Source: Mizuhopecten yessoensis
Taxonomy: Eukaryota
DNA: 64,000 nucleotides
Assembly (NCBI RefSeq): GCF_002113885.1
Contig: NW_018405900.1
Span: forward strand, 1,234,142 to 1,298,141
Direction of reading: 5' to 3'
The notes beneath the pieces were generated by a model. It was not told the origin of the DNA, made no database searches, and saw only the letters and a list, made by a program, of their open reading frames with translations. Of this stretch, positions 1 to 29,200 are shown piece after piece (position 1 is the stretch's first letter; each line of letters opens with the position of its first letter). The position numbers were made by a program, and so were the translations under genes.

Positions 1-745
1 AAACAGGTACACGGCACACAGCTGTAAATACAAACAGGTACACAGCACACAGCTGTAAATACAAACAGGTACACGGCACACAGCTGTAAATACAAACAGG
101 TACATAGCACACAGCTGTAAATACAAACAGGTACACAGCACACAGCTGTTAATACAAACAGGTACACAGCACACAGCTGTAAATACAAACAGGTACATGG
201 TACACAGCTATAAATACAAACAGGATATGGTACACAGCTATAAATACAAACAGGTACATAGCACACAATTATAAATACAAACAGGTACATAGCACACAGC
301 TATAAATACAAACAGGTACATAGCACACAGCTTTAAATACAAACAAGTACATAGCACACAGTTATAAATACAAACAGGTACACAGCACACAGCTGTAAAT
401 ATAAACAGGTACATGACACACAGCTATAAATACAAACAGGTACATAGCACACAGCTGTAAATACAAACAGGTACACAGCACACAGTTATAAAAACAAACA
501 GGTAAACAGCACACAGCTGTAAATACAAACAGGTACATGGTACACAGCTATAAATACAAACAGGTACATAGCACACAGCTGTAAATACATGTACAAACAG
601 GTACATAGCACACAGCTGTAAATACAAACAGGTACATGGTACACAGCTATAAATACATACAGGTACATAACACACAGCTTTTAATACAAACAGTTACACA
701 TCAAACAGTTATAAATACAAACAGGTACATAGTACACAGCTTCGA
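1..745 (-). repeat. 31-bp minisatellite (minus-strand unit GTATTTACAG|CTGTGTGCYGTGTACCTGTTT) in a CLN3-like intron
   Basis: More than 20 tandem copies, running off the left edge. Confidence 0.95.
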
Positions 746-903
746 ATACAAAAGATACACATATGAACACGAACAAATACCAAACCCATCAAAATGATTT
801 CAAACTTATACTACATACCACTGTATAGGAACATAAAAACAAGTGGATAGTAACAAAGAGGGACATTGAGGCTGTCATAGCAGTGTACTAGAGTTATACC
901 TAC

Positions 904-3900
904 ATTGAAGGACAGCCAGGTCGTTAACTTGAAGCACCTGATGATCCGTCTACACATGGTCTCTTCATACATCCTTAGTCGTTCTGCTGGGGCTGTAATA
1001 TATATATCAAAACACATTTAAATATCACTGATGACATCTTCATACTAGTTAAATTATCTTGAAATAAACCGCCATGTTGATAGAAGTGTGTGTATTAGAT
1101 TTTCACACAGCAAGTCAAAACTTTTTAAGTTGAACAAATGCAGCATATTTATCATTTGAAATATAAAACCTTTTTTTTTCTCCAATTTAAATTGATTTTG
1201 ACGCTGGACATAAGACTGTTCATGTACAGGCATTTACCTATCACTAGCATTTACAGATGAAATAATATAATTTACATACTGTATACTATTAGATGTACTA
1301 ATATTGTAGAAATACCCAGTATACTCAGATTTGTACGGACTACAGTCATTATAGAGGGTGTGAAGGTCAAATGTACATCTGTGTTAACTCGCCTTCAAAA
1401 ACTTGTTCCTCCCCACTGACCGCATCATGCAACAGCGGTTTGTGAACCTCATCTTCCTCCTCCTCTGCCTGGACATTCCCAACTGACCTTGCTGACCCTT
1501 GGTCAGATGTTTCTTCTGGAAGTGGTGGTTTAATGATGAAGAAGTAGCTGATCATATACAGAGCTACGAACGGGGTTGTCAACAGGAATGCATATCTAAG
1601 TGTAAATCAATCTGTTTAGTTACATGTATATCAATCATTATACATAATGTATAGTTTACTTGGAAAGAAGATCAATTAATAAAAGATTGGCTTCTAACAT
1701 TTTATAGATAAATAATTACTTTCCTCAGGTTATATCACTTTCAAACTGTCTACAGATACAATGTACATAAAAATAACAAACATCTAATTTTAAGAAACTT
1801 TACTTTTTTGGTTATGAATTTAACATCCAAAATTGGTACCAGAATGAAGAGAACATTGGGTTGCTTATAGCCTAAGTCACCATTTAGGTTGAAATAGTTT
1901 CAATTTTAAGTAAAAAGATTTTATTAATTGATTTATAACTATGAATTGATAAGTTGATGTAGTAGAGCACTTTCCAGTATCACATATATGTAACTTACTT
2001 TGTCAGACTTTTGAGCTGGGCTGTGTTATGTCCACCCGCTCCTACCACACATCCTGTTATGTATCAAAACACACGTGTCTTTGTCAGTTTAATTATAATA
2101 TCATATAATTATAACAATTATTGGTATTTCTCTTCTTTAAGGAATCCTCAAAATGATGTATATTAAATAGGATTATTGTATTTGTTAACTCTGTAGTTTT
2201 TAGTTCACTACAAATATTCTTGATTAAGAATTAGAGACCTGTAAATACCAGCTCCTAGGACCTCGGCCATACCTGAACTAAGACTTACCAAATATGATGT
2301 AAATACCAGCGCCAAGGACCCCGGCCATGCCTGTACCACTGGACCAGGCGTTCACTAAAGTACTAGGAAACAGGCGCAGATATCCAAGGGCAACACTGCA
2401 AAACATGATCTTTGAATATTGATACTAAAGATCAAAACATCACAGCAGAAATGTTTTTGACATGTGGAGAAAGGACCTTGTTTGTGTGAAATGACCTTGA
2501 CACTGTGAAATGAATTTGATATTATGAAGTGACCTTGAGAAATGATATTGATACTGTAAGATGACCTTGACACTGTCTGATGACACTGACACTGTGATAT
2601 GACCTTGACACTGTCTGATGACACTGACACTATGACATGACCTTGGTATGATAACCTTGACACTGTCTGATGACACGGATACTGTGACATGACCTTGGTA
2701 TGATGACCTTGACACTGTGACATGACCTTGGTATGATGAACAACCTAGAAACTTGGATATTTTAAAGGTAAAATTGAACTTGACACAATAATGTTCAAAA
2801 TACTGTTAGATTATGACCTTGATCTGTCAAATGGCCTTGATATGTTACATGACCTTCAAACCACAACATGGCATACAATTGTATATATTTTTAGATGACC
2901 TTGATAATTTTGAGTTAACCAAACACTGCTAGATGATCTCCATAACCTGCACATTGTGAGGTGACCTTAGTAATGTGACATGACCTTGATGTGGGAAATG
3001 ATCCATGATATACTCCAAGATTGAATATTTATGCTTTTAGTGTATTCAATGGGATAAGGTGTATGGAGAAGAATCCCTTTACAGAAACCTGTACAATACT
3101 GTACACTACAGGTTGTTATGTCAACCTCTCTTACAACATTGAGTTTTGTAGCTCAAGTCCTTTTACAAGTCAATTAATGGAGTAAATCATACAGCTTAGT
3201 AAAATTAAATACAATACTAAATGTCCATGATTATCAGATATGTAATAAGAAACTCACTTTTCTCCAAACGCTGCACTAGCTCCAACAAAAACCTGTAGAA
3301 TAGAGTAAGTAAACCAGTTATTACCACTCATCAACACCCCAACAAACACCTGTAGGATAGAGTAAGTATACCAGTTATTACCACTCATCAACACCCCAAC
3401 AAACACCTGTAGGATAGAGTAAGTATACCAGTTATTACCCCTCATCAACACCCCAACAAACACCTGTAGGATAGAGTAAGTATACCAGTTATTACCCCTC
3501 ATCAACACCCCAACAAACACCTGTAGGATAGAGTAAGTATACCAGTTATTACCCCTCATCAACACCCCAACAAACACCTGTAGGATAGAGTAAGTATACC
3601 AGTTATTACCCCTCATCAACACCCCAACAAACACCTGTAGGATAGAGTAAGTATACCAGTTATTACCCCTCATCAACACCCCAACAAACACCTGTAGGAT
3701 AGAGTAAGTATACCAGTTATTACCCCTCATCAACACCCCAACAAACACCTGTAGGATAGAGTAAGTATACCAGTTATTACCACTCATCAACACCCCAACA
3801 AACACCTGTAGGATAGAGTAAGTATACCAGTTATTACCCCTCATCAACACCCCAACAAACACCTGTAGGATAGAGTAAGTATACCAGTTATTACCCCTCA

Positions 3901-6900
3901 TCAACACCCCAACAAACACCTGTAGGATAGAGTAAGTATACCAGTTATTACCCCTCATCAACACCCCAACAAACACCTGTAGGATAGAGTAAGTATACCA
4001 GTTATTACCACTCATCAACACCCCAACAAACACCTGTAGGATAGAGTAAGTATACCAGTTATTACCACTCATCAACACCCCAACAAACACCTGTAGGATA
4101 GAGTAAGTATACCAGTTATTACCACTCATCAACACCCCAACAAACACCTGTAGGATAGAGTAAGTATACCAGTTATTACCACTCATCAACACCCCAACAA
4201 ACACCTGTAGGATAGAGTAAGTATACCAGTTATTACCACTCATCAACACCCCAACAAACACCTGTAGGATAGAGTAAGTATACCAGTTATTACCACTCAT
4301 CAACACCCCAACAAACACCTGTAGGATAGAGTAAGTATACCAGTTATTACCACTCATCAACACCCCAACAAACACCTGTAGGATAGAGTAAGTATACCAG
4401 TTATTACCACTCATCAACACCCCAACAAACACCTGTAGGATAGAGTAAGTATACCAGTTATTACCACTCATCAACACCCCAACAAACACCTGTAGGATAG
4501 AGTAAGTATACCAGTTATTACCACTCATCAACACCCCAACAAACACCTGTAGGATAGAGTAAGTATACCAGTTATTACCACTCATCAACACCCCAACAAA
4601 CACCTGTAGGATAGAGTAAGTATACCAGTTATTACCACTCATCAACACCCCAACAAACACCTGTAGGATAGAGTAAGTATACCAGTTATTACCACTCATC
4701 AACACCCCAACAAACACCTGTAGGATAGAGTAAGTATACCAGTTATTACCACTCATCAACACCCCAACAAACACCTGTAGGATAGAGTAAGTATACCAGT
4801 TATTACCACTCATCAACACCCCAACAAACACCTGTAGGATAGAGTAAGTATACCAGTTATTACCACTCATCAACACCCCAACAAACACCTGTAGGATAGA
4901 GTAAGTATACCAGTTATTACCACTCATCAACACCCCAACAAACACCTGTAGGATAGAGTAAGTATACCAGTTATTACCCCTCATCAACACCCCAACAAAC
5001 ACCTGTAGGATAGAGTAAGTATACCAGTTATTACCACTCATCAACACCCCAACAAACACCTGTAGGATAGAGTAAGTATACCAGTTATTACCACTCATCA
5101 ACACCCCAACAAACACCTGTAGGATAGAGTAAGTATACCAGTTATTACCACTCATCAACACCCCAACAAACACCTGTAGGATAGAGTAAGTATACCAGTT
5201 ATTACCACTCATCAACACCCCAACAAACACCTGTAGGATAGAGTAAGTATACCAGTTATTACCACTCATCAACACCCCAACAAACACCTGTAGGATAGAG
5301 TAAGTATACCAGTTATTACCACTCATCAACACCCCAACAAACACCTGTAGGATAGAGTAAGTATACCAGTTATTACCACTCATCAACACCCCAACAAACA
5401 CCTGTAGGATAGAGTAAGTATACCAGTTATTACCACTCATCAACACCCCAACAAACACCTGTAGGATAGAGTAAGTATACCAGTTATTACCACTCATCAA
5501 CACCCCAACAAACACCTGTAGGATAGAGTAAGTATACCAGTTATTACCACTCATCAACACCCCAACAAACACCTGTAGGATAGAGTAAGTATACCAGTTA
5601 TTACCACTCATCAACACCCCAACAAACACCTGTAGGATAGAGTAAGTATACCAGTTATTACCACTCATCAACACCCCAACAAACACCTGTAGGATAGAGT
5701 AAGTATACCAGTTATTACCACTCATCAACACCCCAACAAACACCTGTAGGATAGAGTAAGTATACCAGTTATTACCACTCATCAACACCCCAACAAACAC
5801 CTGTAGGATAGAGTAAGTATACCAGTTATTACCACTCATCAACACCCCAACAAACACCTGTAGGATAGAGTAAGTATACCAGTTATTACCCCTCATCAAC
5901 ACCCCAACAAACACCTGTAGGATAGAGTAAGTATACCAGTTATTACCACTCATCAACACCCCAACAAACACCTGTAGGATAGAGTAAGTATACCAGTTAT
6001 TACCACTCATCAACACCCCAACAAACACCTGTAGGATAGAGTAAGTATACCAGTTATTACCCCTCATCAACACCCCAACAAACACCTGTAGGATAGAGTA
6101 AGTATACCAGTTATTACCCCTCATCAACACCCCAACAAACACCTGTAGGATAGAGTAAGTATACCAGTTATTACCCCTCATCAACACCCCAACAAACACC
6201 TGTAGGATAGAGTAAGTATACCAGTTATTACCCCTCATCAACACCCCAACAAACACCTGTAGGATAGAGTAAGTATACCAGTTATTACCCCTCATCAACA
6301 CCCCAACAAACACCTGTAGGATAGAGTAAGTATACCAGTTATTACCCCTCATCAACACCCCAACAAACACCTGTAGGATAGAGTAAGTATACCAGTTATT
6401 ACCCCTCATCAACACCCCAACAAACACCTGTAGGATAGAGTAAGTATACCAGTTATTACCACTCATCAACACCCCAACAAACACCTGTAGGATAGAGTAA
6501 GTATACCAGTTATTACCCCTCATCAACACCCCAACAAACACCTGTAGGATAGAGTAAGTATACCAGTTATTACCACTCATCAACACCCCAACAAACACCT
6601 GTAGGATAGAGTAAGTATACCAGTTATTACCCCTCATCAACACCCCAACAAACACCTGTAGGATAGAGTAAGTATACCAGTTATTACCACTCATCAACAC
6701 CCCAACAAACACCTGTAGGATAGAGTAAGTATACCAGTTATTACCCCTCATCAACACCCCAACAAACACCTGTAGGATAGAGTAAGTATACCAGTTATTA
6801 CCACTCATCAACACCCCAACAAACACCTGTAGGATAGAGTAAGTATACCAGTTATTACCCCTCATCAACACCCCAACAAACACCTGTAGGATAGAGTAAG

Positions 6901-9900
6901 TATACCAGTTATTACCACTCATCAACACCCCAACAAACACCTGTAGGATAGAGTAAGTATACCAGTTATTACCCCTCATCAACACCCCAACAAACACCTG
7001 TAGGATAGAGTAAGTATACCAGTTATTACCACTCATCAACACCCCAACAAACACCTGTAGGATAGAGTAAGTATACCAGTTATTACCCCTCATCAACACC
7101 CCAACAAACACCTGTAGGATAGAGTAAGTATACCAGTTATTACCACTCATCAACACCCCAACAAACACCTGTAGGATAGAGTAAGTATACCAGTTATTAC
7201 CCCTCATCAACACCCCAACAAACACCTGTAGGATAGAGTAAGTATACCAGTTATTACCACTCATCAACACCCCAACAAACACCTGTAGGATAGAGTAAGT
7301 ATACCAGTTATTACCCCTCATCAACACCCCAACAAACACCTGTAGGATAGAGTAAGTATACCAGTTATTACCACTCATCAACACCCCAACAAACACCTGT
7401 AGGATAGAGTAAGTATACCAGTTATTACCACTCATCAACATCCCAACAAACACCTGTAGGATAGAGTAAGTATACCAGTTATTACCACTCATCAACACAC
7501 CAACAAACACCTGTAGGATAGAGTAAGTATACCAGTTATTACCACTCATCAACACCCCAACAAACACATGTAGGATAGAGTATGTATACCAGTTATTACC
7601 TCTCAAGTTTACCCCAATAATTGCATTAACTTAAAATAACCACAATACCAACATCCAAACAATCCTCCAACATTTATCGACATACCCATTCCTGGAGAAG
7701 ATTAAAAAAAAAAATTGCTCTTTGATCTATTTTGGCATTCAAAACGTTTCACCAAATCTAGCTGCTAGTTCAGTTACACATCTTGAAGATAAGTCCAGAT
7801 ATTATATAAGAATTACATTGAACCATTAAAGTATGGTATAGTATTAGGTATCCCACCATTACTCCTTTGGTTATGAGTTTATAATCCCTTCAATCAGCAA
7901 ACTACTTTAGCGATATGATGTATGTTTTAGGTGACATGAGTGATTTTATATTGTGAAAGGGGACATGAATAGATTTGGGATGTATTTTAGAAATATTCAT
8001 AAGGGCTTTCAGTTGACCCTTGATATGTACCAATTTCAGAAGTCAAATAGAATTTTTCTCTGAATTTTGGAGAGTCAAAATATATGTCATATAGACATGA
8101 CCTTTAAAACACCAGAGTCAATGTTCATTTTGAGTGTCAAAAAGATACTCTCAGGGGGCTGATATCAGCCTTAAAATTGTAGAAATGCCCCTGTATGTGT
8201 ATTGACATTCCCTCAGCTCCAATGGGTCAGCCCCTTTTTGAGCATAGATTTTGATTTTCATCATCTAATGATAATTATAGAAAATGCTGATTAAAATTGA
8301 ACAGTAAATTTCAGAGGAGATCTCATCTAAAGGTTTTAAACTATCTTACCCTGTATGCCTCTCCCCCTGAGTGGCAGAATCAGCTCTTTTTTTAATATTA
8401 ATTCTGATCCACATCCTGTATGGATCATGTTATGAGATGTTGGTTAAAATCCACCAGTTACTTTCAGAGGAGATGTCATTTGAAGGTTTTACACTATTGT
8501 GACCCTGTACTGCCTCTTCCCCAAGTTGGAGAAGCAGAATCAGCTCCTTCAGTAACTTTCAGAGGAGATGTCATTTGAACATTTTGCACTTAGTGACCCC
8601 TTTACGCCCTTGTTGTCCAGTCCCTTCTTTGAGTACAGATTATGATCTGATCATCATGTAAGGCTTGTTGTAAGAAATGTTGATGAAAATAAAACATCAC
8701 ATTTCACAGGACATAGTTCCTGAAGGGTTAACATTCTCTGATATTTCATGGTCCCACCCTCAGCTCAGAGGAGGGGGCAATATCGCCTTCTAAAGTAAAA
8801 AAATCTGATCCCAATAGAGGTTGATGATTACCAATAAACCTCATCAAAATCTGACAGAGGTTTTCTGAGGAGAAGACAAATATACAAATGTATGATTGTT
8901 AATTATGGGCATTTGACAGATGACACATGCCAAAGGACAAAAAGTTATTACAAAAGGTCACCTGATGGACTCGGATGACATGAAGATATTGGTAGTAACA
9001 ATACTTACAATACAGATAAGAGCAAACCAAAAGCTGAATGCATAGGCCACACCAAACAGACCTGGAACAAGTACAGTGTTAGTAAACATGTATATATCAA
9101 GCCAAACACAGCTTGAACAAGTTTTATTAAACATATATAGGTTTAGTGTGGATTGTAGATCATCTGATGAAGGTGAATATCACATTACAATGTAGCTAGT
9201 CATCAAAATGTAACAAATAAACACTTTACTGGTTGTGTTATACAAATTTTTCTATAATACAACTGGAACAAGTCTGAAAACAACTTCACCAAAACACACT
9301 CAAAGAAGGTCATGTTTCACCAAAATATAGGCCATGCCACACAGACCTCAAACAAGACAAGGAAGTGGATAAAAAGGAAAGGTCATTGTTAAGGTCATAG
9401 CAATGATGCTATATCAGTATTTCATATATTTAAATACAGCTGTACTTCTCATTGTTTTGGTAGTTTTCAACAGGTTGGCCACAGTAAATGTATCAACAAA
9501 CAGAACGCTTTACCTGATGGCTAATTACAATGTTACAGTTTCATAACATTAAACTGTAATACATTTACTATCAAATTTTTTCATTTTTTTTCTACCCATT
9601 TTCTATAAATGATAAATAAGAAACAACCTCCTTACCTATGAGCATGAGGACAGCATTTACGACATAGCGGATCCAGTATCTTGTCTTCAGCAAGAAAAAT
9701 GTATTGCCAACTGTAAAATATATATTAATAAAGAATGTTAAAGTTTTAACATGAACTAAAATTTTGGAAATCTGGTGACTCCAAAATGTTCAAAATGTTC
9801 ATCATGGAAAAGATACAAAATTTGACCGTAACCTTTGACACATTGACCTTGACCTTTGGTCATTTGACTCCTTGTTTAATTCTGACCAACATTGCTGCAT

Positions 9901-12213
9901 AATGCCATAACAAAATGTTCATCAGTGAAAAGATACAAAATTTAACCTTCACTGTTGACCCAGTGACCTTGACCTTTGGTCAATTGACTCCTTGTTTAAT
10001 TCTGAGCAACATTGCTTCAAAGTGTCATACCAAAATGTTCACCAGTGAAAAGATACAAAATTTAACCTTCACCTTTGACCCAATGACCTTGAAATTTGGT
10101 CAGGTTGACACCTTGTTTAATTCTGATCAACTTTGCTTCATCATGTCATAACAAAATGTTCACCAGTGAAAAGATACAAAATTTAACCTTGACCTTTGAA
10201 TCTAATGACCTTAACCTTTGACCTCAACTTTTTACCTCAGTGTGTCTCTTTGTTTAATTCCGAACAACTTTGCATCATAATGTCATAAAATGCTCATTAG
10301 TGAAAAGCTACAAAATTTGACCTTGACCCCTGACCCGATGACCTTGACCTTTGGTCAGTTGACTCCTAGTTTAATTCTGAGCATCATTGCTTCAAAGTGT
10401 CATACCAAAATGTTCACCAGTGAAAAGATACAAATTTTAACCTTGACCTTTGATCCAATGACCTTGACATTTGGTCAGGTTGACTCCTTGTTTAATTCTG
10501 ATCAACTTTGCTTCATCATGTCATAACAAAATGTTCATCAGTGAAAAGATGCAAAATTTGACCTTGACATTTGAACCTAATGACCTTGACCTATGACCTT
10601 GACTTTTTACCTCAATGTGTATTTTTGTGAACTGAACATCTTGACTAGGTTTCATGTACATCGGTCAATAAATACCAAAGTTATCAGCCAGTAACAAAAT
10701 TTGTGGACGGACAGACAGACAGACAGAGTGATTACTATAGGGCACCCGTATCTCCGATACGGGGCCCTAATGATGCAATTACAACAACACTTTCTTAGAC
10801 TTTAGCTGAATGATATATAGAACCAGGGACGTATATACTGTCCCTGATAGAACCCCTTGATTACAATTATATAGATATTTAAAAAATGAAGTTATCTGTA
10901 ATGACTTAAAGTTAAGGGACAATCTACAAGAAAATGTAAAGAAGAGAGATAAACATCAATACATTAGCAAGCTACAACATAATGTATTGTTACAAATGGA
11001 CAAGCTATTGTAATAATTGTAGGCATAGTCCACTGTTCAAACCATGGTGAAATTACTGGATAATTTCAGTTGAAGGAAATTAAAATTAAAAGCCATGATA
11101 CATAGCTACATGTACCCTGATGTTACTCACATTTGACAACAACAGACAGTGCCACATTGGCTCCTACCACCAGACCAACCTGATTCCTTTCATCAAAACT
11201 GAAACAAATATCAAATCAATGATGCTTCGGAAACAACACTTTAGACATGTTTATTATACATTTGTTTTTTAATTTCATGTCATGTTTGAGAACTATCTAG
11301 GTACTTGTTGCTGACAAGTCTAGAGACAATCACCCTAAAGCTCAATGTGACTAGTAAAATATAATATGTAGTCGTGAGTTCGACTCATACTAGAGGTAAT
11401 TGGAAAAGCAACATCCAGGTCACAATGATTTGCAATTTGCAGTCAATAATACATAATTACATACAAATATCATGAGAAAGGGAGACAATGATTGTATTCC
11501 ATATACTACAAAAGGGAGATAATCTTGACATTATTAGATAAGGCAGGTAATCGTCACATCATTAGATAAGGGAGATAATTACCACATTATGAGATAAGGG
11601 AGATGGTAAATAAGACATTACAATATATGGAGGTTATCATCATATCATGAGTTAAGGGAGGTAATTATCACATTTTGAAATAAGGGAGGTAATTATAGAG
11701 GGAGGTACATGAAAATAATCACAGGATAAGGGAGGTAATTGTGATATTGTGTAATCTTACCTGTCAGCTATGGTTTTGGCTGCCGACACAACTATAACAT
11801 ATGGCAGGTTGTTTATGGCTCCCAAAATAAACAAACCAATCTGTAAACAAGTCAACAAAAACACTTCTACTCTGGATTTGATTTTTATCAACATTTTATT
11901 ATGATTATCAATTTATGATGACATTTTAATTCTTATCAATAAGGTCATTAGTATAATACAGAAGTACATTGTACTCGTTGGTCTTTCAATAATAATGCAG
12001 GTTAAAATGCTGCAATTGAAATCTATGGTAAAACTTGCATTTATATTTGGGATTAAGTAATGTAACTATGCATACAGCAAATTACTTACAACAAGCGTAC
12101 ATGTTTAAATTACAAGTGTGTTATTTCCCAGGTCTAGCAGACATTTTATAAAACTATATTTCTATGTTTATATCAATAGCATGTTTTACCCAATTTCTGG
12201 TATAGTTGTCCAT
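904..12213 (-). CDS. CLN3: CLN3/battenin (Btn1)-like lysosomal membrane protein, 5' part; gene continues beyond the left edge
   Basis: Hand-spliced exons (minus strand): 12213-12190 MDNYTRNW; 11840-11761 IGLFILGAINNLPYVIVVSAAKTIAD; 11198-11131; 9710-9636; 9061-9009; 3292-3258 VFVGASAAFGE; 2395-2289 ALGYLRLFPSTLVNAWSSGTGMAG; 2053-1999; 1595-1393; 992-904. Phases are consistent and total 789 nt (263 codons). The G..NN..YV...SAA, GE and WSSGTG.AG motifs are CLN3/Btn1 family signatures. Confidence 0.9.
2490..2990. repeat. Degenerate TGACCTTGA/TGACAC-based tandem repeats
   Basis: Recurring atgaccttgacactgt motifs, best conserved at 2560-2740. Confidence 0.75.
3293..7606 (-). repeat. 57-bp minisatellite, about 76 near-identical copies, abutting CLN3-like exon 3292-3258
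   Basis: Minus-strand unit GTGTTTGTTGGGGTGTTGATGAG(T/G)GGTAATAACTGGTATACTTACTCTATCCTACAG; source of the 1450-aa repeat ORF. Confidence 0.98.
8170..8985 (+). mobile_element. Degenerate Helentron-associated (HINE-like) non-autonomous element
   Basis: Internal diverged repeats (ttcagaggagatgtc), GACA-like tract and terminal ggtcacctga..ggatgac stem, similar in layout to the element at 54479-55592. Confidence 0.4.
9760..10770 (+). mobile_element. Helentron-associated (HINE/Helitron-N-like) element with internal ~121-bp tandem repeats
   Basis: ~121-bp units rich in TGACCTTGACCTT, then a (GACA)n microsatellite at ~10705-10725 and a 3' hairpin CCGTATC-tcc-GATACGG. Confidence 0.7.
10824..10846. mobile_element. 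23-bp TIR remnant with 7-bp target-site duplication
   Basis: ATAGAAC|CAGGGACGTATATACTGTCCCTG|ATAGAAC. Confidence 0.65.
11470..11745. repeat. Degenerate ~30-bp tandem repeat (gataagggag.taatt)
   Basis: About 8 diverged copies next to the donor of exon 11840-11761. Confidence 0.65.
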
Positions 12214-14254: not shown

Positions 14255-17200
14255 ATGGATGTCCTGCCCTTCCTACTCGTCGAGGAGGCCATCAAGAAAA
14301 ACAAAGCTTCTGTGAAGTAGGTCACCATTAGCTTATTCTATCACTTGTATCGCTATTCATACATGTAGCTAATATTAAGATTCGTAGGCATCGTTTTGTG
14401 CTGCGCTATCTCGAAATAATGAGGTTCTTCTTTGCTCTGTTCTGTCTTGATGCCCTTGAGTTCTTTTGTCACTTGCTGTGTAGAATACTTCTACTTCTAC
14501 CATTTTATTACCTACTTCCGCATAGTGAAGATCATGTCATATAAAGGTGTAGCGCTATGAAAGAAAAGGAACAGGACTTAATATTGATGAACAGAGATAT
14601 ATGATTTGAAGGGCAGTAGTGAATCAGAAGAAATAATTTGAGAAGAGAGTTTGTTCCAATCTTTGATAGTCCGAGGAAAGAATGATTCCTTCCTTACAGA
14701 CGTCCTGCATGAGATAGTTTGAAATGAGGTTCGATGACTATGCCTTGTTTGTCTGGTTATAGGGGTGAGCTGTTTAGTAATAATGGCAACTTTATTATGG
14801 TGGATTTTATAGAACATGGACAGCCTCGCGTCTTTCCTGCGATCTGAAAGACTACGCCATTTTAGGTGTTCTAACATGTTGCCAACGCTGGAGGTGTTAC
14901 AATAGCGGTTGGCAACGAAGCCGGCAGTCCTGCGCTGTACCATCTCTAGCTTGTCTATTTTTAAGTAAGGGTCCCATACTGGCTAGCGTATTCAACCTGA
15001 GGGCGGTCCAGGGACTTATAGGCCATTTGTTTGATGTTAGAGGATGACATTTTGAGATTGCGCCTCAGGAAACCCAGAGTTGAATTGGCCTTTTTTGTGA
15101 TGTTATTGATATGAGTACTCCACTTCAGATCAGAAGAATTGAATAGAATTGATGAATACTGCTGGATGATGTTGGCTTTTACAACATTTTGTAAATGTTT
15201 GTTTCCATCGACGATGTTGTAACGATTCCCACTGCAGTCTTGGGTGAGGCCTGGTTCCGTGCACACGCCTAAAAAAAAACCAAAACAATCTTTTAAAACA
15301 GTTTAACTGGCGATGTCTCGATTGCTCTCGCAGCAGGACAATTGAGATGATGGATATAAAACAATTCAATTCAAGTCAAATTTATTTGGTAAAAAGGTAC
15401 AACTTAACAATTTCATACAGTACCCAATACATTTTTTGGCACTAATAATTTATATAACTGGTTACATTATAAAACATATGAATGTAAAATTATATACGTC
15501 TCTAAAAAAAGTTATCACAATTTTATAAATTACCAGATAGGTAATGGCTATTCCTACGAAAAATAAAATAACTAAAATATATGTCGCCCTTAAAACCAGG
15601 AATACCCAGAAAGCCCTGAAGCTTATTTCCACTGGGGTCCATTAAAAGACACATACACACTACTTAAGTAAAAAATACTATAGTTATTATATTTGAAGAT
15701 AACTCAATTTTTATGTTGAAACTGATGTTAAGGATCCCCGTCCCTCCACCTAAAAACGTAATGAGGCATTTTTTTTTTGGTCTACAGCATCTCTATTGCA
15801 TAAGCAAATTATTTCTGAACAATAACCCATACCTTGCGAGATTTTCTTCAGATTTTTTGGGAAATCATGAAATTTCGATTTTTTTCCAATTGAACAAAAT
15901 GAAACAAAATATATATTATTCGATGCAAAAATGGTTTATTACAAATATAACACATAAAATCCTTAATATATAGGTTATAACTTAAAACACGTTGCATTGA
16001 AGTACAGCACCCATATTGTGAACACACTCACACACACATACACAAAACTATATATAAAACATATTACGTCAATAAAATACAAATACCTGATCCTGTTCTC
16101 TATTCAGTTTTTCAAAAAGATGTTTTTTGATCGCAACTTTGAATGATCTTTCTGGTAAAGAATTCCAATCTTTAGCAGCATTGCAATAAAACATGGTAGA
16201 TTCTGCCCCACTCACAATTTGGAATATAAAAATTGTATTCACTAGATTTTGTATAGTGTTGCTGCAGTTCTGTTAGGCTTTTGAAGTCAGTTTTTAAATA
16301 GGAGAGGCATTTGTCATTAAAGATATTAAAAGCATGGTTTACTCTGACTTGTTTTACTCTGTTACTAACATTAATCATATTTAGACTAGATAATTCATTG
16401 TAACCAATTATTGACCTGGAATCTAATTTAAGAAAAAATCTAATAACTTTATTTCGTGAAATCTGCAGTCTTTGTTTTAGTTTTTTTAGTTAAACCAGAG
16501 TACCAGGATGAGCAAGAGTAATCAAATTGACATTGTATTATGGCTGAGCATAAGATTTTCCTGGTGGACAGTGGAAGAGAACTTGTTTGCCTATATAGAA
16601 ATTTAAGTCTACTACTAGTTGAAGAGAACTTGTCTGCCTATATAGAAATTTAAGTCTACTACTTGTGGAAGAGAACTTGTCTGCCTATATAGAAATTTAA
16701 GTCTACTACTAGTGGAAGAGAACTTGTTTGCCTATATAGAAATTTAAGTCTACTACTTACTTTTTTACAATGCTGTTGACTATACATTCACCAGATAAAA
16801 AAGCAATCAATGGACAAACCAAGATAGTTGACGAAGGCTGCATCAGAATAGCATGACCATTACAAATAATTTTAAACTGTTCAACATTTTTTAGCTTTCT
16901 CTTAGTTCCAAAGAGGATGCATTCCCTAGATGTATAATGGCAGTTTATTATCAACTAGCCAATCTGAGCATGATTCTAGAACCTGGCCCAATTTGGTTGA
17001 TATACATTTTGGGTCAGAGTGAGAAAAAGGAATTGTACTGTCATCAGCATAAAAAATAGGTTTGCAAGCAGGATCTATACTGATTAGCATGTCATTACAG
17101 TATTTCAACACGTATGTTGTTTAATGTTCCTTCCTGTTTAAAATGTACGTACTGTTTTGGAGTGGTTGATGTTGTATGTAAAGTTTTGGAGTGGTATATC

Positions 17201-20200
17201 TGTATGTTTTACATCCAGTTGTGGAGTGGTATATCTGTATGTTTTACATCCAGTTGTGGAGTAGTATATCTGTCTGCTAAGCATGTAGTTGAAAATTGGT
17301 ATACCTGCCTGTATAATACACAGTTGTGGAGTGGTAAATCTGTCTGTATAATACACAGTTGTGGAGTGGTAAATCTGTCTGTATAATGTACAGTTGTGGA
17401 GTGGTATACCTGTCTGTATAATACACAGTTGTGGAGTGGTAAATCTGTCTGTATAATACACAGTTGTGGAGTGGTAAATATGTCTGTATAATACACAGTT
17501 GTGGAGTGGTACACCTGTCTGTATAATACACAGTTGTGGAGTGGTATACCTGTCTGTATAATACACAGTTGTGGAGTGGTAAATTTGTCTGTATAATGTA
17601 CAGTTGTGGAGTGGTAAATCTGTCTGTATAATGTACAGTTGTGGAGTGGTAAATCTGTCTGTATAATGTACAGTTGTGGAGTGGTATACCTGTCTGTATA
17701 ATACACAGTTGTGGAGTGGTAAATCTGTCTGTATAATACACAGTTGTGGAGTGGTAAATATGTCTGTATAATACACAGTTGTGGAGTGGTACACCTGTCT
17801 GTATAATACACAGTTGTGGAGTGGTATACCTGTCTGTATAATACACAGTTGTGGAGTGGTAAATTTGTCTGTATAATGTACAGTTGTGGAGTGGTAAATC
17901 TGTCTGTATAATGTACAGTTGTGGAGTGGTAAATCTGTCTGTATAATGTACAGTTGTGGAGTGGTATACCTGTCTGTATAATACACAGTTGTGGAGTGGT
18001 AAATCTGTCTGTATAATACACAGTTGTGGAGTGGTAAATCTGTCTGTATAATGTACAGTTGTGGAGTGGTAAATCTGTCTGTATAATGTACAGTTGTGGA
18101 GTGGTATACCTGTCTGTATAATACACAGTTGTGGAGTGGTAAATCTGTCTGTATAATACACAGTTGTGGAGTGGTAAATATGTCTGTATAATACACAGTT
18201 GTGGAGTGGTACACCTGTCTGTATAATACACAGTTGTGGAGTGGTATACCTGTCTGTATAATACACAGTTGTGGAGTGGTAAATTTGTCTGTATAATGTA
18301 CAGTTGTGGAGTGGTAAATCTGTCTGTATAATGTACAGTTGTGGAGTGGTAAATCTGTCTGTATAATGTACAGTTGTGGAGTGGTATACCTGTCTGTATA
18401 ATACACAGTTGTGGAGTGGTAAATCTGTCTGTATAATACACAGTTGTGGAGTGGTAAATATGTCTGTATAATACACAGTTGTGGAGTGGTACACCTGTCT
18501 GTATAATACACAGTTGTGGAGTGGTATACCTGTCTGTATAATACACAGTTGTGGAGTGGTAAATTTGTCTGTATAATGTACAGTTGTGGAGTGGTAAATC
18601 TGTCTGTATAATGTACAGTTGTGGAGTGGTAAATCTGTCTGTATAATGTACAGTTGTGGAGTGGTATACCTGTCTGTATAATACACAGTTGTGGAGTGGT
18701 AAATCTGTCTGTATAATACACAGTTGTGGAGTGGTAAATATGTCTGTATAATACACAGTTGTGGAGTGGTACACCTGTCTGTATAATACACAGTTGTGGA
18801 GTGGTATACCTGTCTGTATAATACACAGTTGTGGAGTGGTAAATTTGTCTGTATAATGTACAGTTGTGGAGTGGTAAATCTGTCTGTATAATGTACAGTT
18901 GTGGAGTGGTAAATCTGTCTGTATAATGTACAGTTGTGGAGTGGTATACCTGTCTGTATAATACACAGTTGTGGAGTGGTAAATCTGTCTGTATAATACA
19001 CAGTTGTGGAGTGGTAAATATGTCTGTATAATACACAGTTGTGGAGTGGTACACCTGTCTGTATAATACACAGTTGTGGAGTGGTATACCTGTCTGTATA
19101 ATACACAGTTGTGGAGTGGTAAATTTGTCTGTATAATGTACAGTTGTGGAGTGGTAAATCTGTCTGTATAATGTACAGTTGTGGAGTGGTAAATCTGTCT
19201 GTATAATGTACAGTTGTGGAGTGGTATACCTGTCTGTATAATACACAGTTGTGGAGTGGTAAATCTGTCTGTATAATACACAGTTGTGGAGTGGTAAATA
19301 TGTCTGTATAATACACAGTTGTGGAGTGGTACACCTGTCTGTATAATACACAGTTGTGGAGTGGTATACCTGTCTGTATAATACACAGTTGTGGAGTGGT
19401 AAATTTGTCTGTATAATGTACAGTTGTGGAGTGGTAAATCTGTCTGTATAATGTACAGTTGTGGAGTGGTAAATCTGTCTGTATAATGTACAGTTGTGGA
19501 GTGGTATACCTGTCTGTATAATACACAGTTGTGGAGTGGTAAATCTGTCTGTATAATACACAGTTGTGGAGTGGTAAATATGTCTGTATAATACACAGTT
19601 GTGGAGTGGTACACCTGTCTGTATAATACACAGTTGTGGAGTGGTATACCTGTCTGTATAATACACAGTTGTGGAGTGGTAAATTTGTCTGTATAATGTA
19701 CAGTTGTGGAGTGGTAAATCTGTCTGTATAATGTACAGTTGTGGAGTGGTAAATCTGTCTGTATAATGTACAGTTGTGGAGTGGTATACCTGTCTGTATA
19801 ATACACAGTTGTGGAGTGGTAAATCTGTCTGTATAATACACAGTTGTGGAGTGGTAAATATGTCTGTATAATACACAGTTGTGGAGTGGTACACCTGTCT
19901 GTATAATACACAGTTGTGGAGTGGTATACCTGTCTGTATAATACACAGTTGTGGAGTGGTAAATTTGTCTGTATAATGTACAGTTGTGGAGTGGTAAATC
20001 TGTCTGTATAATGTACAGTTGTGGAGTGGTAAATCTGTCTGTATAATGTACAGTTGTGGAGTGGTATACCTGTCTGTATAATACACAGTTGTGGAGTGGT
20101 AAATCTGTCTGTATAATACACAGTTGTGGAGTGGTAAATATGTCTGTATAATACACAGTTGTGGAGTGGTACACCTGTCTGTATAATACACAGTTGTGGA

Positions 20201-23200
20201 GTGGTATACCTGTCTGTATAATACACAGTTGTGGAGTGGTAAATTTGTCTGTATAATGTACAGTTGTGGAGTGGTAAATCTGTCTGTATAATGTACAGTT
20301 GTGGAGTGGTAAATCTGTCTGTATAATGTACAGTTGTGGAGTGGTATACCTGTCTGTATAATACACAGTTGTGGAGTGGTAAATCTGTCTGTATAATACA
20401 CAGTTGTGGAGTGGTAAATATGTCTGTATAATACACAGTTGTGGAGTGGTACACCTGTCTGTATAATACACAGTTGTGGAGTGGTATACCTGTCTGTATA
20501 ATACACAGTTGTGGAGTGGTAAATTTGTCTGTATAATGTACAGTTGTGGAGTGGTAAATCTGTCTGTATAATGTACAGTTGTGAAGTGGTATACTTGTCT
20601 GTATAATACACAGTTTTGGAGTGGTATATCTGTCTGCTAAGCATGTAGTTGCAGATTGGTAAATCTGTCTGTATAATACACAGTTGTGGAGTGGTGGGGG
20701 TGGCATACCTGTCTGTATAATACACAGTTGTGGAGTGGTATATCATTCTGTATAATGTACAGTTGTGGAGTGGTATACTTGTCTGTATAATACACAGTTG
20801 CGGAGTGCTATAGTTGTCTGTATAATGTACAGTTGTCGAGTGGTTTACCTGTCTGTATAATGTACAATTGTTGTGGAGTGGTATACCTGTCTGGTTAATG
20901 TTCAATTGTAGAGTGATATATTTGTTTGTATTACCTGTCTGTCTAATGTACAAATGTGGAGTGGTATACTTGTCTATTATATTTACAGTTATTGGGGGTA
21001 AATAAATTTTCATTTCTGAATTTTTAAGCTCTTATCATCGCCAAATTACAGGTAATTGATGACCCAGCCTGGATCAAATTAATGTAGATATGAGAGGTAA
21101 TATTTGTATGCTGGTTGATTTTCAGGTTACAGGAATATGTTGCCCTGATGGTATGGGAGCGAGCACGTGTGGAGCAGACCTACATCAAGAACCTCAATGG
21201 GTGGGCGGACAAAATAGTAAAGGAGGGCAAAGGTACGTTCTCAAAATTAACCTGCTTAGGTATTCCAGGCTTGTCATTTTTTTCCGTTTGTACAGAGCAA
21301 TGTTACAAAAAGATTTAGGGATTTAAAGTGTGTTCAACTTAGTGTTCTTGTCCGACTTTCAAGGTCACAAAGGTCAAATGTGTTTTAATCTTGTATCATG
21401 TTCGTTTGAATAACTTAATATATACTGATAGTTTGCCTATAGGTATATTTTAGTCCACTTTTAAGGTTACAAGAGTGTGATATTAATACAAGGTGAGCGA
21501 TGCAGTCACATTGCGCCTCTTGTTTCTTAAATATTGGCATAACCTGAGCATATTTGAGACTGGAAAAGTATATTTTTGTATGAAAAAATACATGATCTGC
21601 AAAAACTGTACGGACAGGAGGAATGGCGCTTGACTTCATAACACTGATAGAGATACATAAATACATTGTACCATCAATGATTTGTATGTGAAGCATGTAT
21701 GGTACTGATGAATAGTTACAATTACCACAGAGTGCGTAGGATGTGTTCAGAAGTTTTGCACAATTTTGATAATTATAAAAAGTATTTGATGGACAAAATG
21801 TAAAGTACACAGTAAATAATACAGCAACACAATGTTTCGCGTGTTCCCTCGGCAACAGATTTCCGGGACAATGAGGTGTTCCAGATGATAGCCGACATTT
21901 TGCCCGGAGAGGCTGAACTGACCGCCGCTGCCCATCAGCGCGTGTACAACCAAATCTTAGAGGACAGTGGGCCTTACAACATCCTATATAGGTATAGTCC
22001 CTATAAACAACTCTATTTATCAAAGAAAACTATATCAAATATTTAAATTGATGTTGTTAAAACGAACCTTGTAGGACGTTGTTTTTGTTTTGTTTTTCGT
22101 TTTTGTCTTTTGTTTGTATGTTTGTTTACTAATTTAAACTTCTTTATTTTTTGTTTAATTTAATTTTTGTTCTGCTTTTGTTATCGCTGTAATGGGTACT
22201 TACATTTCTTGTACAGTCTGACAATCTTTACTACTTTTTCCCTAGTTCATATAAATGTAGTGAACTCTACCGACGTGATGATACATGTACGTATTTACAC
22301 TGACAGGGACATGGGATTGACGGAAGGAATCTTCCATCGGAACTGCCGAGGGGTCGCGGGTATCGAGGAAGACTTCGTCAAGGACAACAGGAATAGGGTT
22401 AATTTGGAGTCGGTGCATTCCCATAGGAAGAAGGTATCGATAGTTACTGCTATATTTGTTCTCGTTCAACTTGTGCCAAAAACACAGCGGACGGATGCTG
22501 GCAATGGGACTTCGGATATACTGTAAATAAAGTGATTGCTATTCAGTTGCTCACCACGGGTTCAGCGATTAGATCGCTTCAAAACGAGTCCTACTGTAAA
22601 GTTTTCTTGTGTTTTCATACTAATTTTATAACGTAAAAAGCTACCCAAGGAGTGCAAAAATTGGGACTCCATCTAGAATCCATAAAATATACAATAGTAT
22701 TGTTTCCATTTCTACAGTGTCACATCCAAAATCAATATAGAAAAAAAAATCGATTTCACGCGTAAATAATAATCATTCGCAAACAACACATTACAGGCAA
22801 TGCAGGATTGTAAGGTAAAATTGGACCTGCTCGAGTCACAGATGACCTCCAGAAGTCGTCTGGCCACTAGACGGTCATCGAAGGGGCGCCGAGTGGACAG
22901 TCTGATGAACAAGATGATAGACCAGAAGCGCAAGCATGACTTGGAAGAGGAGGGGTCAGAGGTAGCAGAACGGGAACTCGAGTCACTTTGTCAAGGCAAA
23001 AAAATGGTATGTTTAGAATAAATTTAAATCCATATTGAATACACACCACCATGAAATGTTCGCCGACATGCATAACTGGGATGACATAATACACGAAGAT
23101 GTTTGGCGCGGCAAGTTCTTCCCCAAAATCGAGGGGGTGGAGGGGACACTTTTCTTTCTTTGTAACTTCTGATTTTAATGTTGCAGTTGTGTGTTTTACT

Positions 23201-26200: not shown

Positions 26201-29200
26201 ATAATAATATATGTCCGTTTTAATAATATATGTCCGTTTATAATAATATATGTCCAACCTGGCCTATAACTATAAACCACCTGTCTATAATAATATTATA
26301 CAGTTATAGAATGGATATGAGGGAAATAGCAAAGTTATGGTCCTCCGAGGTGAAAATCTATTTCCAGAGTCGGCAAAGCCGCCGAGGGAAATATTGGTTT
26401 TTTTTACCAGGGGTAACCATAAATTTGGTATTTCCCGAATTACCCATTTTTTAACTGTTTTATTATAACGAAAATATTAACAAATGAAATTATAATTCAT
26501 CATGATTCAAAGAGAGAAAAAATATTACAATTTGACTCAAGTGCTGTATGCATCGTCGTTGATGATATCTTCATTTCTAGCATTCAATAAGTGTTTTGTA
26601 GACCGTATCTAATGGTCACCATTGCTTTCCTAATATATTTAGTCCCAGCCACTGATTTAAGTTCTTTCTGCGTGGATTTAATGTGTCCCCTAGTGTGTTT
26701 TGTTTAAATTGACTTGTTGTTTCGTACTTAGTGAGATCAGACGACATAGAGACGATCTACCTGCCCGAAGAAGACATCCCGGCCTACCGACCACCCGCTC
26801 CATTCCCTCCCCGTCCATTTTGTCCTAGTCTGTCTGATGACGACGAGGACAGAGACGACGATTTTGTTGACGAACCTATCATTGAGGCCCATGCCGCCAC
26901 CAGGTTTGGATTTGGTATGTACATGTATATGAAGAGCAGCAGATTATGTTAATATTTTAATAATTCAATATAAAGATTGCTAATAAGCGTTAAAAAGTTG
27001 AATAGATATATGTGAATTATTCAGTAAAGTACCACATAGTTGTGGGAATCGACAAGATATGTTTCTTAATTACCTGACAAGTTTTCATAATGATTAGTTC
27101 AATAAAACACAACAGCGAAACAACACATGCTTTCGAGGTATGATTAAAAATGAGTTATTTCCGTAGATGCCAGCAATGTCCGGTTGTATGCTAAACCCTT
27201 AGACAGTGAGCCAGAGGAGGAGGAGGAGGAGAAGGAAGGGGACAGCGATAATATTGCTTTGATGCGTGGAGTCCGAGTGATAGCCCTCCATCCGTACAGC
27301 GCGCGCACGACGGATCAACTATCCTTCAAACAAAGTGAGACTCCCTTTCTAGAACACATCTCACCTTTGTCACCCATTTCAACCGTGAAATATATTTATA
27401 CAATAGTAGCCTTAATGATCTGACAACATCGCTGACCTAATGTATGTAAGGAGGCTCTTGGTCATTCTTCTAGAGGTTCAAAATAAGGGAAATATGACCG
27501 GGAAACTCGAGCGCGTAAGGTCATCATGATGTTTTATTTCCCTGTGATGTGATTAATTTATTCCAATCAGACACGGTGTTATATAGATGGGGTATAATAA
27601 TAAACACCACTGACCTGACATAAACCAATCACCTAATCCATGCTAAACGCTAGTGAATGGATATGAGGCATTCCTGTTAGAAACAGGGATGAGCAAGTGG
27701 TTATGTCAGATGTGTGGGAGATGTTGCTTAAGTAAGGGGAATTCCCCAACACGACCGGAAGTTCCGCGTAATGATGGAGTGTTTTACTCTTGAGGATAAC
27801 TTGTAAACACTTAAAAACGTGAGGATAAACAAACTTAGTCCGATTTCGTCAATCGATGGCAAAGTAATCAGCACTCAATTCAACAGAAAACCCCTTTGTT
27901 TAGAAATAAGCTAACATTTGTCGACTGTTAACCTTCCGTTAGTCAGCTATACATGTTAGTAAGCTATTAATCCTAGGTTGTATCGTGAAGTGGATACATA
28001 CATCTCAGTGACCTGATAAGCTTTAATTTATTGGCAATACGACGTACTGATACATATATATATATATTTGGTGGCATGATATTGCATTGAAATACATGTA
28101 TTTTGCTGTAATATGTAAAGTTTAAGGCATGAAATTGCATCATAAAGTTATTGGCTTGACATGGCAGTATTATGTAAGTGGCTTGACATGGCAGTATAAC
28201 GTAAGTGGCTTGACATGGCAGTATAATATAAGTGGCATGTTCGTGATAAGCTAAATTAGTGACATAACATTACTATAATATGTAAAATTGCTAAGTGGCA
28301 TGACGTTGGTGTTATGTTACAACATAATGAAAGACAATGCAATGGTTTGGTGTAATCTGTAAAGTCAATAGCATGACATTGCTGTTATATATAAAGTTAG
28401 TGATATGACATTGCAGCAGATACATAAAGCTAATGGCTTGACTTTGCTGAAAAATAGTGATGTGACATTGCAACATAATATCAACGGCAAATTCTTATAT
28501 GCTAAGTTAGTGAAATTATATTGCTATGCTATAATACATAAAATTATTGACGTGACATTGCTGTAATTTGTAAAATTTCTGACATTGCTGTAATGCATAC
28601 CGTTATTGACGTCAAATTGCTGTAATTTGTAAAATTCCTGACATTGTTGTAATATATAGTTATTTTCGTGACATTGCTGTAGTTTGTAAAATTACTGACA
28701 TTGCTGTAATAGATACAATTATTGACGTAACATTGCTGTAATTTGTAAAATTGCTGACATTACTGTAATACTTACAGGTATTGACGTAACATTGCTGTAG
28801 TTTGTAAAATTGCTGACAAGAAATTGAAGCATGAAGTTATTGGCATGAAATGTCAGTCAACAAAAATAGTGACATGAAATTAAATATAATTACAGCATAG
28901 TGCTAGTGGTCTGACATTTTAGCTGAAATGTATGGACATGATATCGCAGCAAACACAAAGTAACACAAAGTTATGAACATGACATTGAAATTCAAAGTTA
29001 GGGGCATGACATTGAAATTCAAAGTTAGGGGCATGACATTGAAATACAAAGTTAGGGACATGACATTGTAACACAAAGTTAGGGATATGACATTGTAACA
29101 CAAAGTTAGGGCATGACATTGTAACACAAAGTTAGGGATATGACATTGTAGCACAACGTTAAGGACATGCCATTGTAACACAAAATAAGGGACATGACAT

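What the first reader, a model, noticed from the sequence alone, without database searches (positions are those of the whole stretch)
3258..7606. About 75 tandem, in-frame decoy splice acceptors stacked in front of a 35-nt CLN3 exon
Seen in sequence: the 57-bp unit is a copy of this exon's own 3' splice site (CTTAC branch-like motif, pyrimidine tract, CTACAG) plus its first codons (GTG TTT GTT GG vs real GTT TTT GTT GG). The upstream exon (9061-9009) ends in phase 0, the unit length is a multiple of 3, and the frame has no stop. Splicing to any copy would therefore give an open mRNA adding n x VFVGVLM(S/R)GNNWYTYSILQ inside the transmembrane region. The true acceptor differs from the decoys by only two intronic changes, both to T (GGTTTAC vs GGTATAC; ATTCTACAG vs ATCCTACAG). 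Each unit also has AG|GT and an internal G|GTAATA. Inference: either the spliceosome picks the last of about 76 near-identical acceptors (exon definition or recursive splicing), or the array acts as a VNTR-encoded variable-length exon.
Basis: partly seen in the sequence, partly recalled or inferred. Interest (0 to 1): 0.8.

Follow-up and report, generated by a model that had tools for sequence, protein, structure and literature searches.

The report
Splice-acceptor minisatellite in CLN3 intron
One intron of a mollusc's CLN3 gene ends in about 75 near-identical tandem copies of its own intron-exon junction, but assembled transcripts from two RNA data sets skip them all and use the last, true junction, so this is a large example of a known repeat type ("mirage" minisatellite) that is common in this genome.

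Summary
Window 3282-7605 holds a 57-bp unit repeated 75.9 times at 99% identity. On the gene's minus strand each unit is 46 nt of intron tail (branch-like motif, pyrimidine tract, CAG) plus the first 11 nt of the 35-nt CLN3 exon 3292-3258. There are 74 intact decoy acceptors plus the true one. The reading frame through the array is open.

The functional reading is not supported. Transcript contigs from two RNA runs of different studies join exon 9061-9009 to letters identical to window 3290-3261, which is the true exon. No run shows a joint from donor 9009 to a unit, and one RNA run holds no array words at all. Minor decoy use is not excluded, because only 5 raw RNA reads could be laid.

A DNA run from a sample not flagged as the assembly's possible source gives about 80 copies by word depth, so this is not an assembly artefact.

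The kind is already described: "mirage" minisatellites in amphioxus, and on the donor side human F7 intron 7, where splicing also stays normal. A third of this window is tandem repeat. This scan has already logged 33 notes of the same kind on other DNA of this genome.

Verdict: a tolerated intronic VNTR; new member of a known kind; low interest.

The parts
3350..7567 (-). Units 2-75 of the 57-bp array: 74 decoy copies of the intron tail (TAATAAC and CTTAC branch-like motifs, pyrimidine tract, CTACAG) plus the first 11 exon-like nt (GTGTTTGTTGG).
   Evidence: 46 units match the consensus, 26 are G-type at position 24 and 2 carry private changes. The 5'-to-3' pattern includes a (TG)x9 block and long T and G runs.
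3293..3349 (-). Unit 1: the last unit, carrying the authentic branch region, pyrimidine tract and acceptor AG (3294-3293). It differs from the consensus by A>T (-20) and C>T (-7).
   Evidence: Use of this acceptor is shown by the RNA contigs.
3258..3292 (-). True 35-nt CLN3 exon (VFVGASAAFGE, then 2 nt), followed by the donor AAAA|GTGAGT.
   Evidence: Sequence. The loose-end consensus of the X16 and X19 contigs equals window 3261-3290.
7568..7624 (-). Unit 76: degenerate edge copy (45/57 matches), ending in CAT, so it has no acceptor.
   Evidence: The unique DNA contig of independent run X10 reaches 7571, which gives the same 5' boundary.
9009..9061 (-). Upstream 53-nt exon (LFGVAYAFSFWFALICI), ending in phase 0, with donor ATT|GTAAGT.
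   Evidence: RNA pieces of X16 and X19 lie at 9007-9059, with a joint to 9634.
9635..9711 (-). 77-nt CLN3 exon (GNTFFLLKTRYWIRYVVNAVLMLI..).
   Evidence: The joint 9059/9634 (skips 574, cut +2) is seen in X23, X19 and X16.
2289..2395 (-). 107-nt CLN3 exon (VALGYLRLFPSTLVNAWSSGTGMAGVLGAGIYIIF).
   Evidence: Pfam PF02487 at E 1.8e-7, profile positions 104-135.
11761..11840 (-). CLN3 exon encoding IGLFILGAINNLPYVIVVSAAKTIAD.
   Evidence: Pfam PF02487 at E 2.4e-4, profile positions 3-24.

Best explanation
This is a "mirage" minisatellite. A 57-bp segment spanning the intron-exon boundary (46 nt of intron tail plus 11 nt of exon) was duplicated in tandem. It was then amplified, by slippage or unequal exchange, to about 75-80 copies inside the intron upstream of a 35-nt CLN3 exon.

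Shown: the array is real. It is present at about the same size in a second sample not flagged as the assembly's source. The assembled mRNA uses only the last, exon-proximal acceptor.

Inferred: the array is a tolerated, probably neutral VNTR. The last acceptor would win because it alone lies next to the rest of the exon (purine-rich GGAGAAAA) and to a strong donor (GTGAGT) 35 nt downstream. That is exon definition, or exon-proximal site choice, and it mirrors the choice of the exon-proximal donor in human F7 intron 7. The decoys are followed instead by a G-run and by only weak donor-like motifs.

The private changes sit in the first and last units, as expected when array edges escape homogenisation.
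For: Array anatomy.

RNA: the X16 contig (2406 nt, depth 28.3) and the X19 contig (414 nt, depth 8.8) come from different studies. Both run 9711-9635, then 9061-9009, then letters identical to 3290-3261. No joint to any unit appears in four runs, and X19 and X23 have zero depth on units.

DNA: run X10, from a sample not flagged as the possible source of the assembly, has unit word depth 920 against 11.2 for unique sequence. That gives about 80 copies. Its unique contig ends at 7571.

Background: 33.6% of the window and 54% of the CLN3 part is tandem repeat.

Literature: tandem repeats spanning exon-intron boundaries, including acceptor-side ones, are described in amphioxus and do not disturb splicing (PMC3087553; PMC3902484). 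In F7 IVS7, identical pseudo-sites stay silent and the exon-proximal site is chosen (PMC1557585).
Against: The evidence for exclusive use of the true site rests on assembled contigs, which drop rare variants. Only 5 raw RNA reads could be laid.

Run X16, which is only guessed to be RNA, holds unit words at a total depth of about 136. That is 4.8 times its exon depth, or about 1.7 per copy, while its unique intron shows depth 0. Pre-mRNA or genomic carry-over multiplied by about 80 copies can explain this, but I did not prove it.

The last decoys would define exons of 92, 149 nt and so on, using the same strong donor. Exon definition alone therefore does not explain why they lose.

The array itself could not be sent to the reads tool.
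Confidence: 0.8

Rival explanations
1. Some decoy acceptors are used at a low level, or in particular tissues or alleles. This would give stable in-frame CLN3 mRNAs with n x 19 extra residues (VFVGVLM(S/R)GNNWYTYSILQ), that is, a VNTR-encoded variable-length exon.
For: The frame is open and the unit is 19 codons, so such mRNAs would escape nonsense-mediated decay. The decoy and true acceptors are nearly identical. X16 holds array words at 4.8 times exon depth with no unique-intron coverage. Contigs and 5 raw reads cannot exclude minor isoforms.
Against: Both transcript contigs use the true junction. No joint from 9009 to a unit is reported in any run at a 3% reporting threshold. X19 has no array words, which bounds the mean number of units per transcript below about 0.2 if words seen fewer than twice are dropped; that cut-off is my assumption, not stated by the tool. 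Other mirage arrays described in the literature are silent.
Confidence: 0.08
2. The array is functional at the RNA level without being coding. It might allow stepwise (recursive) removal of the intron through the AG|GT junctions, or act as a GU-rich, G-run platform for splicing factors that tunes CLN3 splicing speed or efficiency.
For: Every unit boundary reads CAG|GTG. Each unit has a GU-rich stretch (GUGUUUGUUGGGGUGUUGAUGAG) and a GGGG run. The true exon starts GTT, which would end any recursion.
Against: The donor regenerated after joining exon 53 would be ATT|GTGTTT, without +4A and +5G; this is read from the sequence. Steps of 57 nt are shorter than usual animal introns. No intermediate junction was seen. 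There is no significant RNA structure, and predicted accessibility does not differ between true and decoy sites. Similar arrays occur in many unrelated genes of this genome, which fits a mutational by-product better.
Confidence: 0.05
3. The array is an assembly artefact, with an inflated copy number.
For: Near-perfect 4.3-kb tandem arrays are hard to assemble. I could not lay long reads across it.
Against: DNA run X10, from a sample not flagged as the assembly's source, gives about 80 copies by word depth and the same 5' boundary. The aperiodic order of T- and G-type units is what a real long-read assembly shows.
Confidence: 0.03

Closest known systems
Amphioxus "mirage" minisatellites (Adh3, globin BflGb6/BflGb9, troponin C, PGBD5)
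   Same: They are tandem repeats whose unit spans an exon-intron boundary. BflGb6 is acceptor-side: the 3' end of the intron plus the 5' part of exon 2. Many copies keep AG/GT signals, yet mRNA splicing is regular. Length varies between haplotypes, and the edge units escape homogenisation (PMC3087553; PMC3902484).
   Different: This one is in a mollusc, not a cephalochordate. It has about 75 copies at 99% identity, against 3-6 copies at 81-100% identity for BflGb6. The unit is 57 bp, within the Adh3 range of 10-72 bp. All decoys are in frame with no stop.
Human F7 intron 7 37-bp VNTR
   Same: It is a minisatellite whose terminal element spans the exon-intron boundary, so the authentic site is flanked by identical pseudo-sites. 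These stay silent, and the exon-proximal site is selected (PMC1557585).
   Different: It is donor-side (5' splice sites downstream of the exon), with far fewer copies. Its selection mechanism was tested with 50 constructs. Nothing has been tested experimentally here.
Recursive splice sites (ratchet points)
   Same: Both have a juxtaposed acceptor and donor motif, AG|GT, inside a long intron.
   Different: Known ratchet points regenerate a strong donor (GTAAGT-like; stated from general knowledge). Here the motif is GTGTTT and the upstream exon ends in ATT. No RNA intermediates were seen.

Membership tests
Mirage minisatellite (tandem repeat of an exon-intron boundary) | Head-to-tail tandem array | tested here: met
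   TRF: period 57, 75.9 copies, 99% matches.
Mirage minisatellite (tandem repeat of an exon-intron boundary) | The unit contains the splice signal plus adjacent exon sequence, and the terminal unit is the authentic junction. | tested here: met
   The unit is 46 nt of intron tail ending in CAG plus 11 exon nt. Unit 1 abuts exon 3292-3258.
Mirage minisatellite (tandem repeat of an exon-intron boundary) | Regular splicing is kept and the copies stay silent in mRNA. | tested here: met
   The X16 and X19 transcript contigs join 9009 to the true exon letters 3290-3261, and there is no joint to units. Minor use is not excluded.
Mirage minisatellite (tandem repeat of an exon-intron boundary) | Length or composition instability between individuals | tested here: inconclusive
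   X10 gives about 80 copies by word depth, against 76 in the assembly. Its two variant unitigs have depths 466 and 435, while the assembly has 49 T-type and 26 G-type units; assigning those unitigs to T and G is my inference from their mismatch counts. X16 shows extra unit variants. Depth ratios are rough, and no allele sizing was done.
Mirage minisatellite (tandem repeat of an exon-intron boundary) | Edge units are excluded from homogenisation. | tested here: met
   All private changes lie in units 1, 73, 74 and 76. The interior units differ only at position 24.
Coding VNTR / variable-length exon | Array sequence is present in mature mRNA, joined to the flanking exons. | tested here: not met
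   No joint from 9009 to a unit. X19 and X23 have zero depth on units. The contigs bypass the array.
Recursive splice site | A strong 5' splice site is regenerated after the first step. | tested here: not met
   The sequence would give ATT|GTGTTT. RNA intermediates cannot be tested with the data at hand.
CLN3 / battenin (Pfam PF02487) | Significant match of the exon translations to the family profile | tested here: met
   Exon 2394-2290: E 1.8e-7, 31.0 bits, at the cut-off, profile positions 104-135. Exon 11840-11763: E 2.4e-4, profile positions 3-24. Exons were searched one by one. The joined model was not built.

The most novel reading that the evidence does not exclude
Decoy acceptors are used at a low level or in specific tissues or alleles. 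CLN3 would then be made with a variable number of 19-residue in-frame insertions that escape nonsense-mediated decay. Alternatively, array length tunes CLN3 splicing efficiency. The excess of array-derived words in run X16, with no unique-intron coverage, would be the first hint.
Probability: 0.06. Interest if true: 0.6.

Novelty: new member of a known kind. Interest (0 to 1): 0.22.

Why it matters
As it stands, this is an ordinary by-product of a very repeat-rich genome.

Its one use is as a natural test-bed for 3' splice-site choice. It offers 74 complete, nearly identical acceptors, each with its own branch region and pyrimidine tract. They lie in frame, ahead of a 35-nt exon, and the most distal one (the exon-proximal one) wins. 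This is the acceptor-side counterpart of the F7 intron 7 model for donors. It argues that the splicing commitment waits for the downstream exon instead of going to the first acceptor transcribed.

It is also a warning for gene prediction. The array reads as a 1450-aa open frame fused to a real exon.

Tried and rejected
RNA structure as the selector. Folding two decoy units, or the last unit plus the exon, gave energies no better than shuffles (z = 0.29, 0.94 and -0.88). Predicted unpaired probability of the branch-to-AG region is the same for the true site (0.09) and the decoys (0.10-0.12). Rejected.

Open frame as a sign of coding. It is expected by chance in about 1 case in 8. The only common variant is non-synonymous (S/R). 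This is no evidence for coding.

Raw RNA reads (X23). Only 5 reads landed on the stretch. They confirm the 9059/9634 joint and the upstream exon near 11131. None crosses the 9009 donor in reportable numbers.

Laying reads on the array itself. I sent 7340-9760, which holds about 4.5 units.

Full-length protein search. The joined spliced model was not built or searched. Exons were searched singly. The large protein searches were not used, because the claim does not rest on them.

Organism. The runs are coded "organism A". Earlier scan notes call the genome Yesso scallop. I did not test this.
Full report
**Observation.** Tandem Repeats Finder reports one array at 3282-7605 with period 57, 75.9 copies, 99% matches, no indels and score 8410. 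I cut the minus strand in register with the acceptor of the exon that starts at 3292. Units 1-75 (3293-7567) all end in CTACAG. Unit 76 (7568-7624) is a degenerate edge copy (45/57 matches) that ends in CAT. The sequence before it is unique. There are therefore 74 decoy acceptors plus the true one.

Forty-six units equal the consensus. Twenty-six differ only at unit position 24 (AGT to AGG). Units 73 and 74 carry one private change each. Unit 1, the true junction, carries exactly two: A>T at -20 and C>T at -7. From 5' to 3', the T- and G-type units form a (TG)x9 block followed by long G and T runs. This is the footprint of repeated unequal exchange or slippage, some of it in 114-bp steps.

**Gene model.** On the minus strand the exons are:

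| Exon | Note |
|---|---|
| 11840-11761 | matches Pfam CLN3 (below) |
| ends near 11131 | upstream end not mapped |
| 9711-9635 | |
| 9061-9009 | ends in phase 0, ..ALICI |
| 3292-3258 | 35 nt, VFVGASAAFGE |
| 2395-2289 | matches Pfam CLN3 (below) |

Searched singly against Pfam, exon 2394-2290 matches CLN3 (PF02487) at E 1.8e-7, 31.0 bits, exactly the curated cut-off, on profile positions 104-135. Exon 11840-11763 matches at E 2.4e-4 on positions 3-24. I did not build or search the joined model.

The frame set by exon 9061-9009 runs open through the whole array (ORF 3254-7606, 1450 aa). The other two frames have two stops per unit. A unit length divisible by 3 with 19 stop-free codons is expected in about one random case in eight, so the open frame is not evidence of coding.

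**RNA evidence.** The run search returned runs of one coded organism: many DNA runs, several RNA or probable RNA runs kept as contigs, and one RNA run kept as raw reads. The reads tool turns away long repeats, so I did not send the array. I laid four runs on 7340-9760. That stretch holds exons 9711-9635 and 9061-9009, the unique intron and the first 4.5 units, so a decoy junction from any unit could align as a joint.

- Two transcript contigs from different studies, X16 (2406 nt, depth 28.3) and X19 (414 nt, depth 8.8), cover 9710-9634 and 9059-9007 with the intron removed.
- Both then continue into letters off the stretch. The 30-letter consensus occurs once in the window, at 3261-3290, inside the true 35-nt exon. 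The first GT of the exon is absorbed into the alignment at 9008-9007.
- A decoy would read GTGTTTGTTGGGGTGTTGATG instead.
- No joint from 9009 to a unit was reported in any run at a 3% threshold.
- X19 has zero depth on the units. If words seen fewer than twice are dropped (my assumption about the contig build, not stated by the tool), this bounds the mean number of units per transcript below about 0.2.
- The raw-read run X23 gave only 5 reads. They confirm the 9059/9634 joint and the link to the exon near 11131, with none on units. That is too few to bound minor isoforms.

One point is not fully explained. X16 holds unit words at a total depth of about 136, against 28 for its exon contig, while its unique intron shows 0. 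Per copy that is about 1.7, or 6% of exon depth. This is what unspliced RNA or genomic carry-over would give once multiplied by about 80 copies. Low-depth unique words may simply be filtered out. I could not prove this.

**DNA evidence.** X10 comes from a sample that is not flagged as the possible source of the assembly. It has unit word depth 920 against 11.2 for the flanking unique contig, which gives about 80 copies. Its unique contig ends at 7571, the same 5' boundary. Its two variant unitigs have depths 466 and 435, while the assembly has 49 T-type and 26 G-type units. Reading those unitigs as the T and G types is my inference from their mismatch counts. The array is therefore real and large in a second sample, and probably polymorphic in composition.

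**Background.** TRF covers 33.6% of the window (24 merged arrays, ten of 300 bp or more) and 54% of the CLN3 part. That part holds about 16 exon boundaries in roughly 5.5 kb of non-repeat sequence. A random 57-bp seed would span a boundary in roughly 14% of cases. With five or six arrays in the gene, one boundary-spanning array is about what chance gives.

**What is known.** Tandem repeats spanning exon-intron boundaries were named "mirages" in amphioxus Adh3. They were found again in globin genes; BflGb6 is acceptor-side, with 3-6 copies of 150-160 bp. Troponin C and PGBD5 also have them. Splicing stays regular although many copies keep AG/GT signals, arrays differ between haplotypes, and edge units escape homogenisation (PMC3087553; PMC3902484). 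Human F7 intron 7 carries a 37-bp VNTR whose first element spans the exon 7 donor. Its identical pseudo-sites are competent but silent, and the exon-proximal site is chosen (PMC1557585).

This scan already holds 33 notes of the same kind on other pieces of this genome, which those notes call Yesso scallop. Several report that RNA uses only the true junction. I took the "mirage" lead from those notes and checked it in the papers. I did not test the species name or their enrichment claims.

**How it most likely works.**
- Shown: the last, exon-proximal acceptor is the one in assembled mRNA.
- Inferred: the choice is made by exon definition. Only the last acceptor is followed by the rest of the exon (purine-rich GGAGAAAA) and a strong donor (AAAA|GTGAGT) at +35.
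- Each decoy is followed instead by a GGGG run and only weak donor-like motifs: CAG|GTGTTT, and G|GTAATA at +25, which lies 32 nt before the next AG.
- First-come-first-served use of the earliest transcribed acceptor is clearly not what happens.
- The last decoys would still make exons of 92, 149 nt and so on with the same donor. Proximity or the exon's own sequence must therefore add to the choice, as in F7.
- RNA structure does not explain it. Folds are no better than shuffles, and predicted accessibility is equal for true and decoy sites.
- The two U-gaining changes in unit 1 may strengthen the true tract, or may be plain edge divergence. Unit 76 shares the array's A and C at those positions, which hints that the T's are derived. 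Two changes prove nothing.

**Verdict.** The "variable-length exon" half is not. The feature is a large, very homogeneous new member of a known kind, and its interest is low.

Noticed in passing
window 1-759: A second array in the same gene: a 31-bp unit, 24.4+ copies, 87% matches. On the minus strand each unit carries an acceptor-like TTTGTATTTACAG|CTGTGTGC. It runs off the window start, so I cannot tell whether it abuts the next CLN3 exon.
   Followed up: partly
window 2240-2336: A relic two-copy duplication across the donor of exon 2395-2289. Exon letters 2336-2298 recur at 2278-2240 in the intron (35/39 identical, offset 58 nt), ending in a pseudo-donor CAG|GTCTCT. It looks like a decayed donor-side mirage.
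   Followed up: partly
window 50034-53815: A 31-bp minisatellite of about 120 copies flips orientation twice. The block 50034-51004 and the block 53430-53815 lie in one orientation. The block 50997-53437 is the reverse complement of the same unit.
   Followed up: no
window 17182-20893, 28960-30875, 32433-35029: Three more large minisatellites: 35 bp x 106, 27 bp x 71 and 43 bp x 60. The first gives open frames of over 1000 aa on the minus strand, which are repeat artefacts. Tandem repeats make up 33.6% of the window.
   Followed up: no
window 7625-7681: The unique flank just 5' of the array is GT-rich and contains TGTTGGAG, the same 8-mer as the true exon start (3286-3279), plus further TGTTGG motifs. 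This could be microhomology that seeded the first duplication, or a very old decayed copy.
   Followed up: no
window 7340-7440 (run X16): A probable RNA run holds array-unit words at 4.8 times the depth of the CLN3 exon contig, but nothing on the unique intron. It also shows extra unit variants not present in the assembly.
   Followed up: partly
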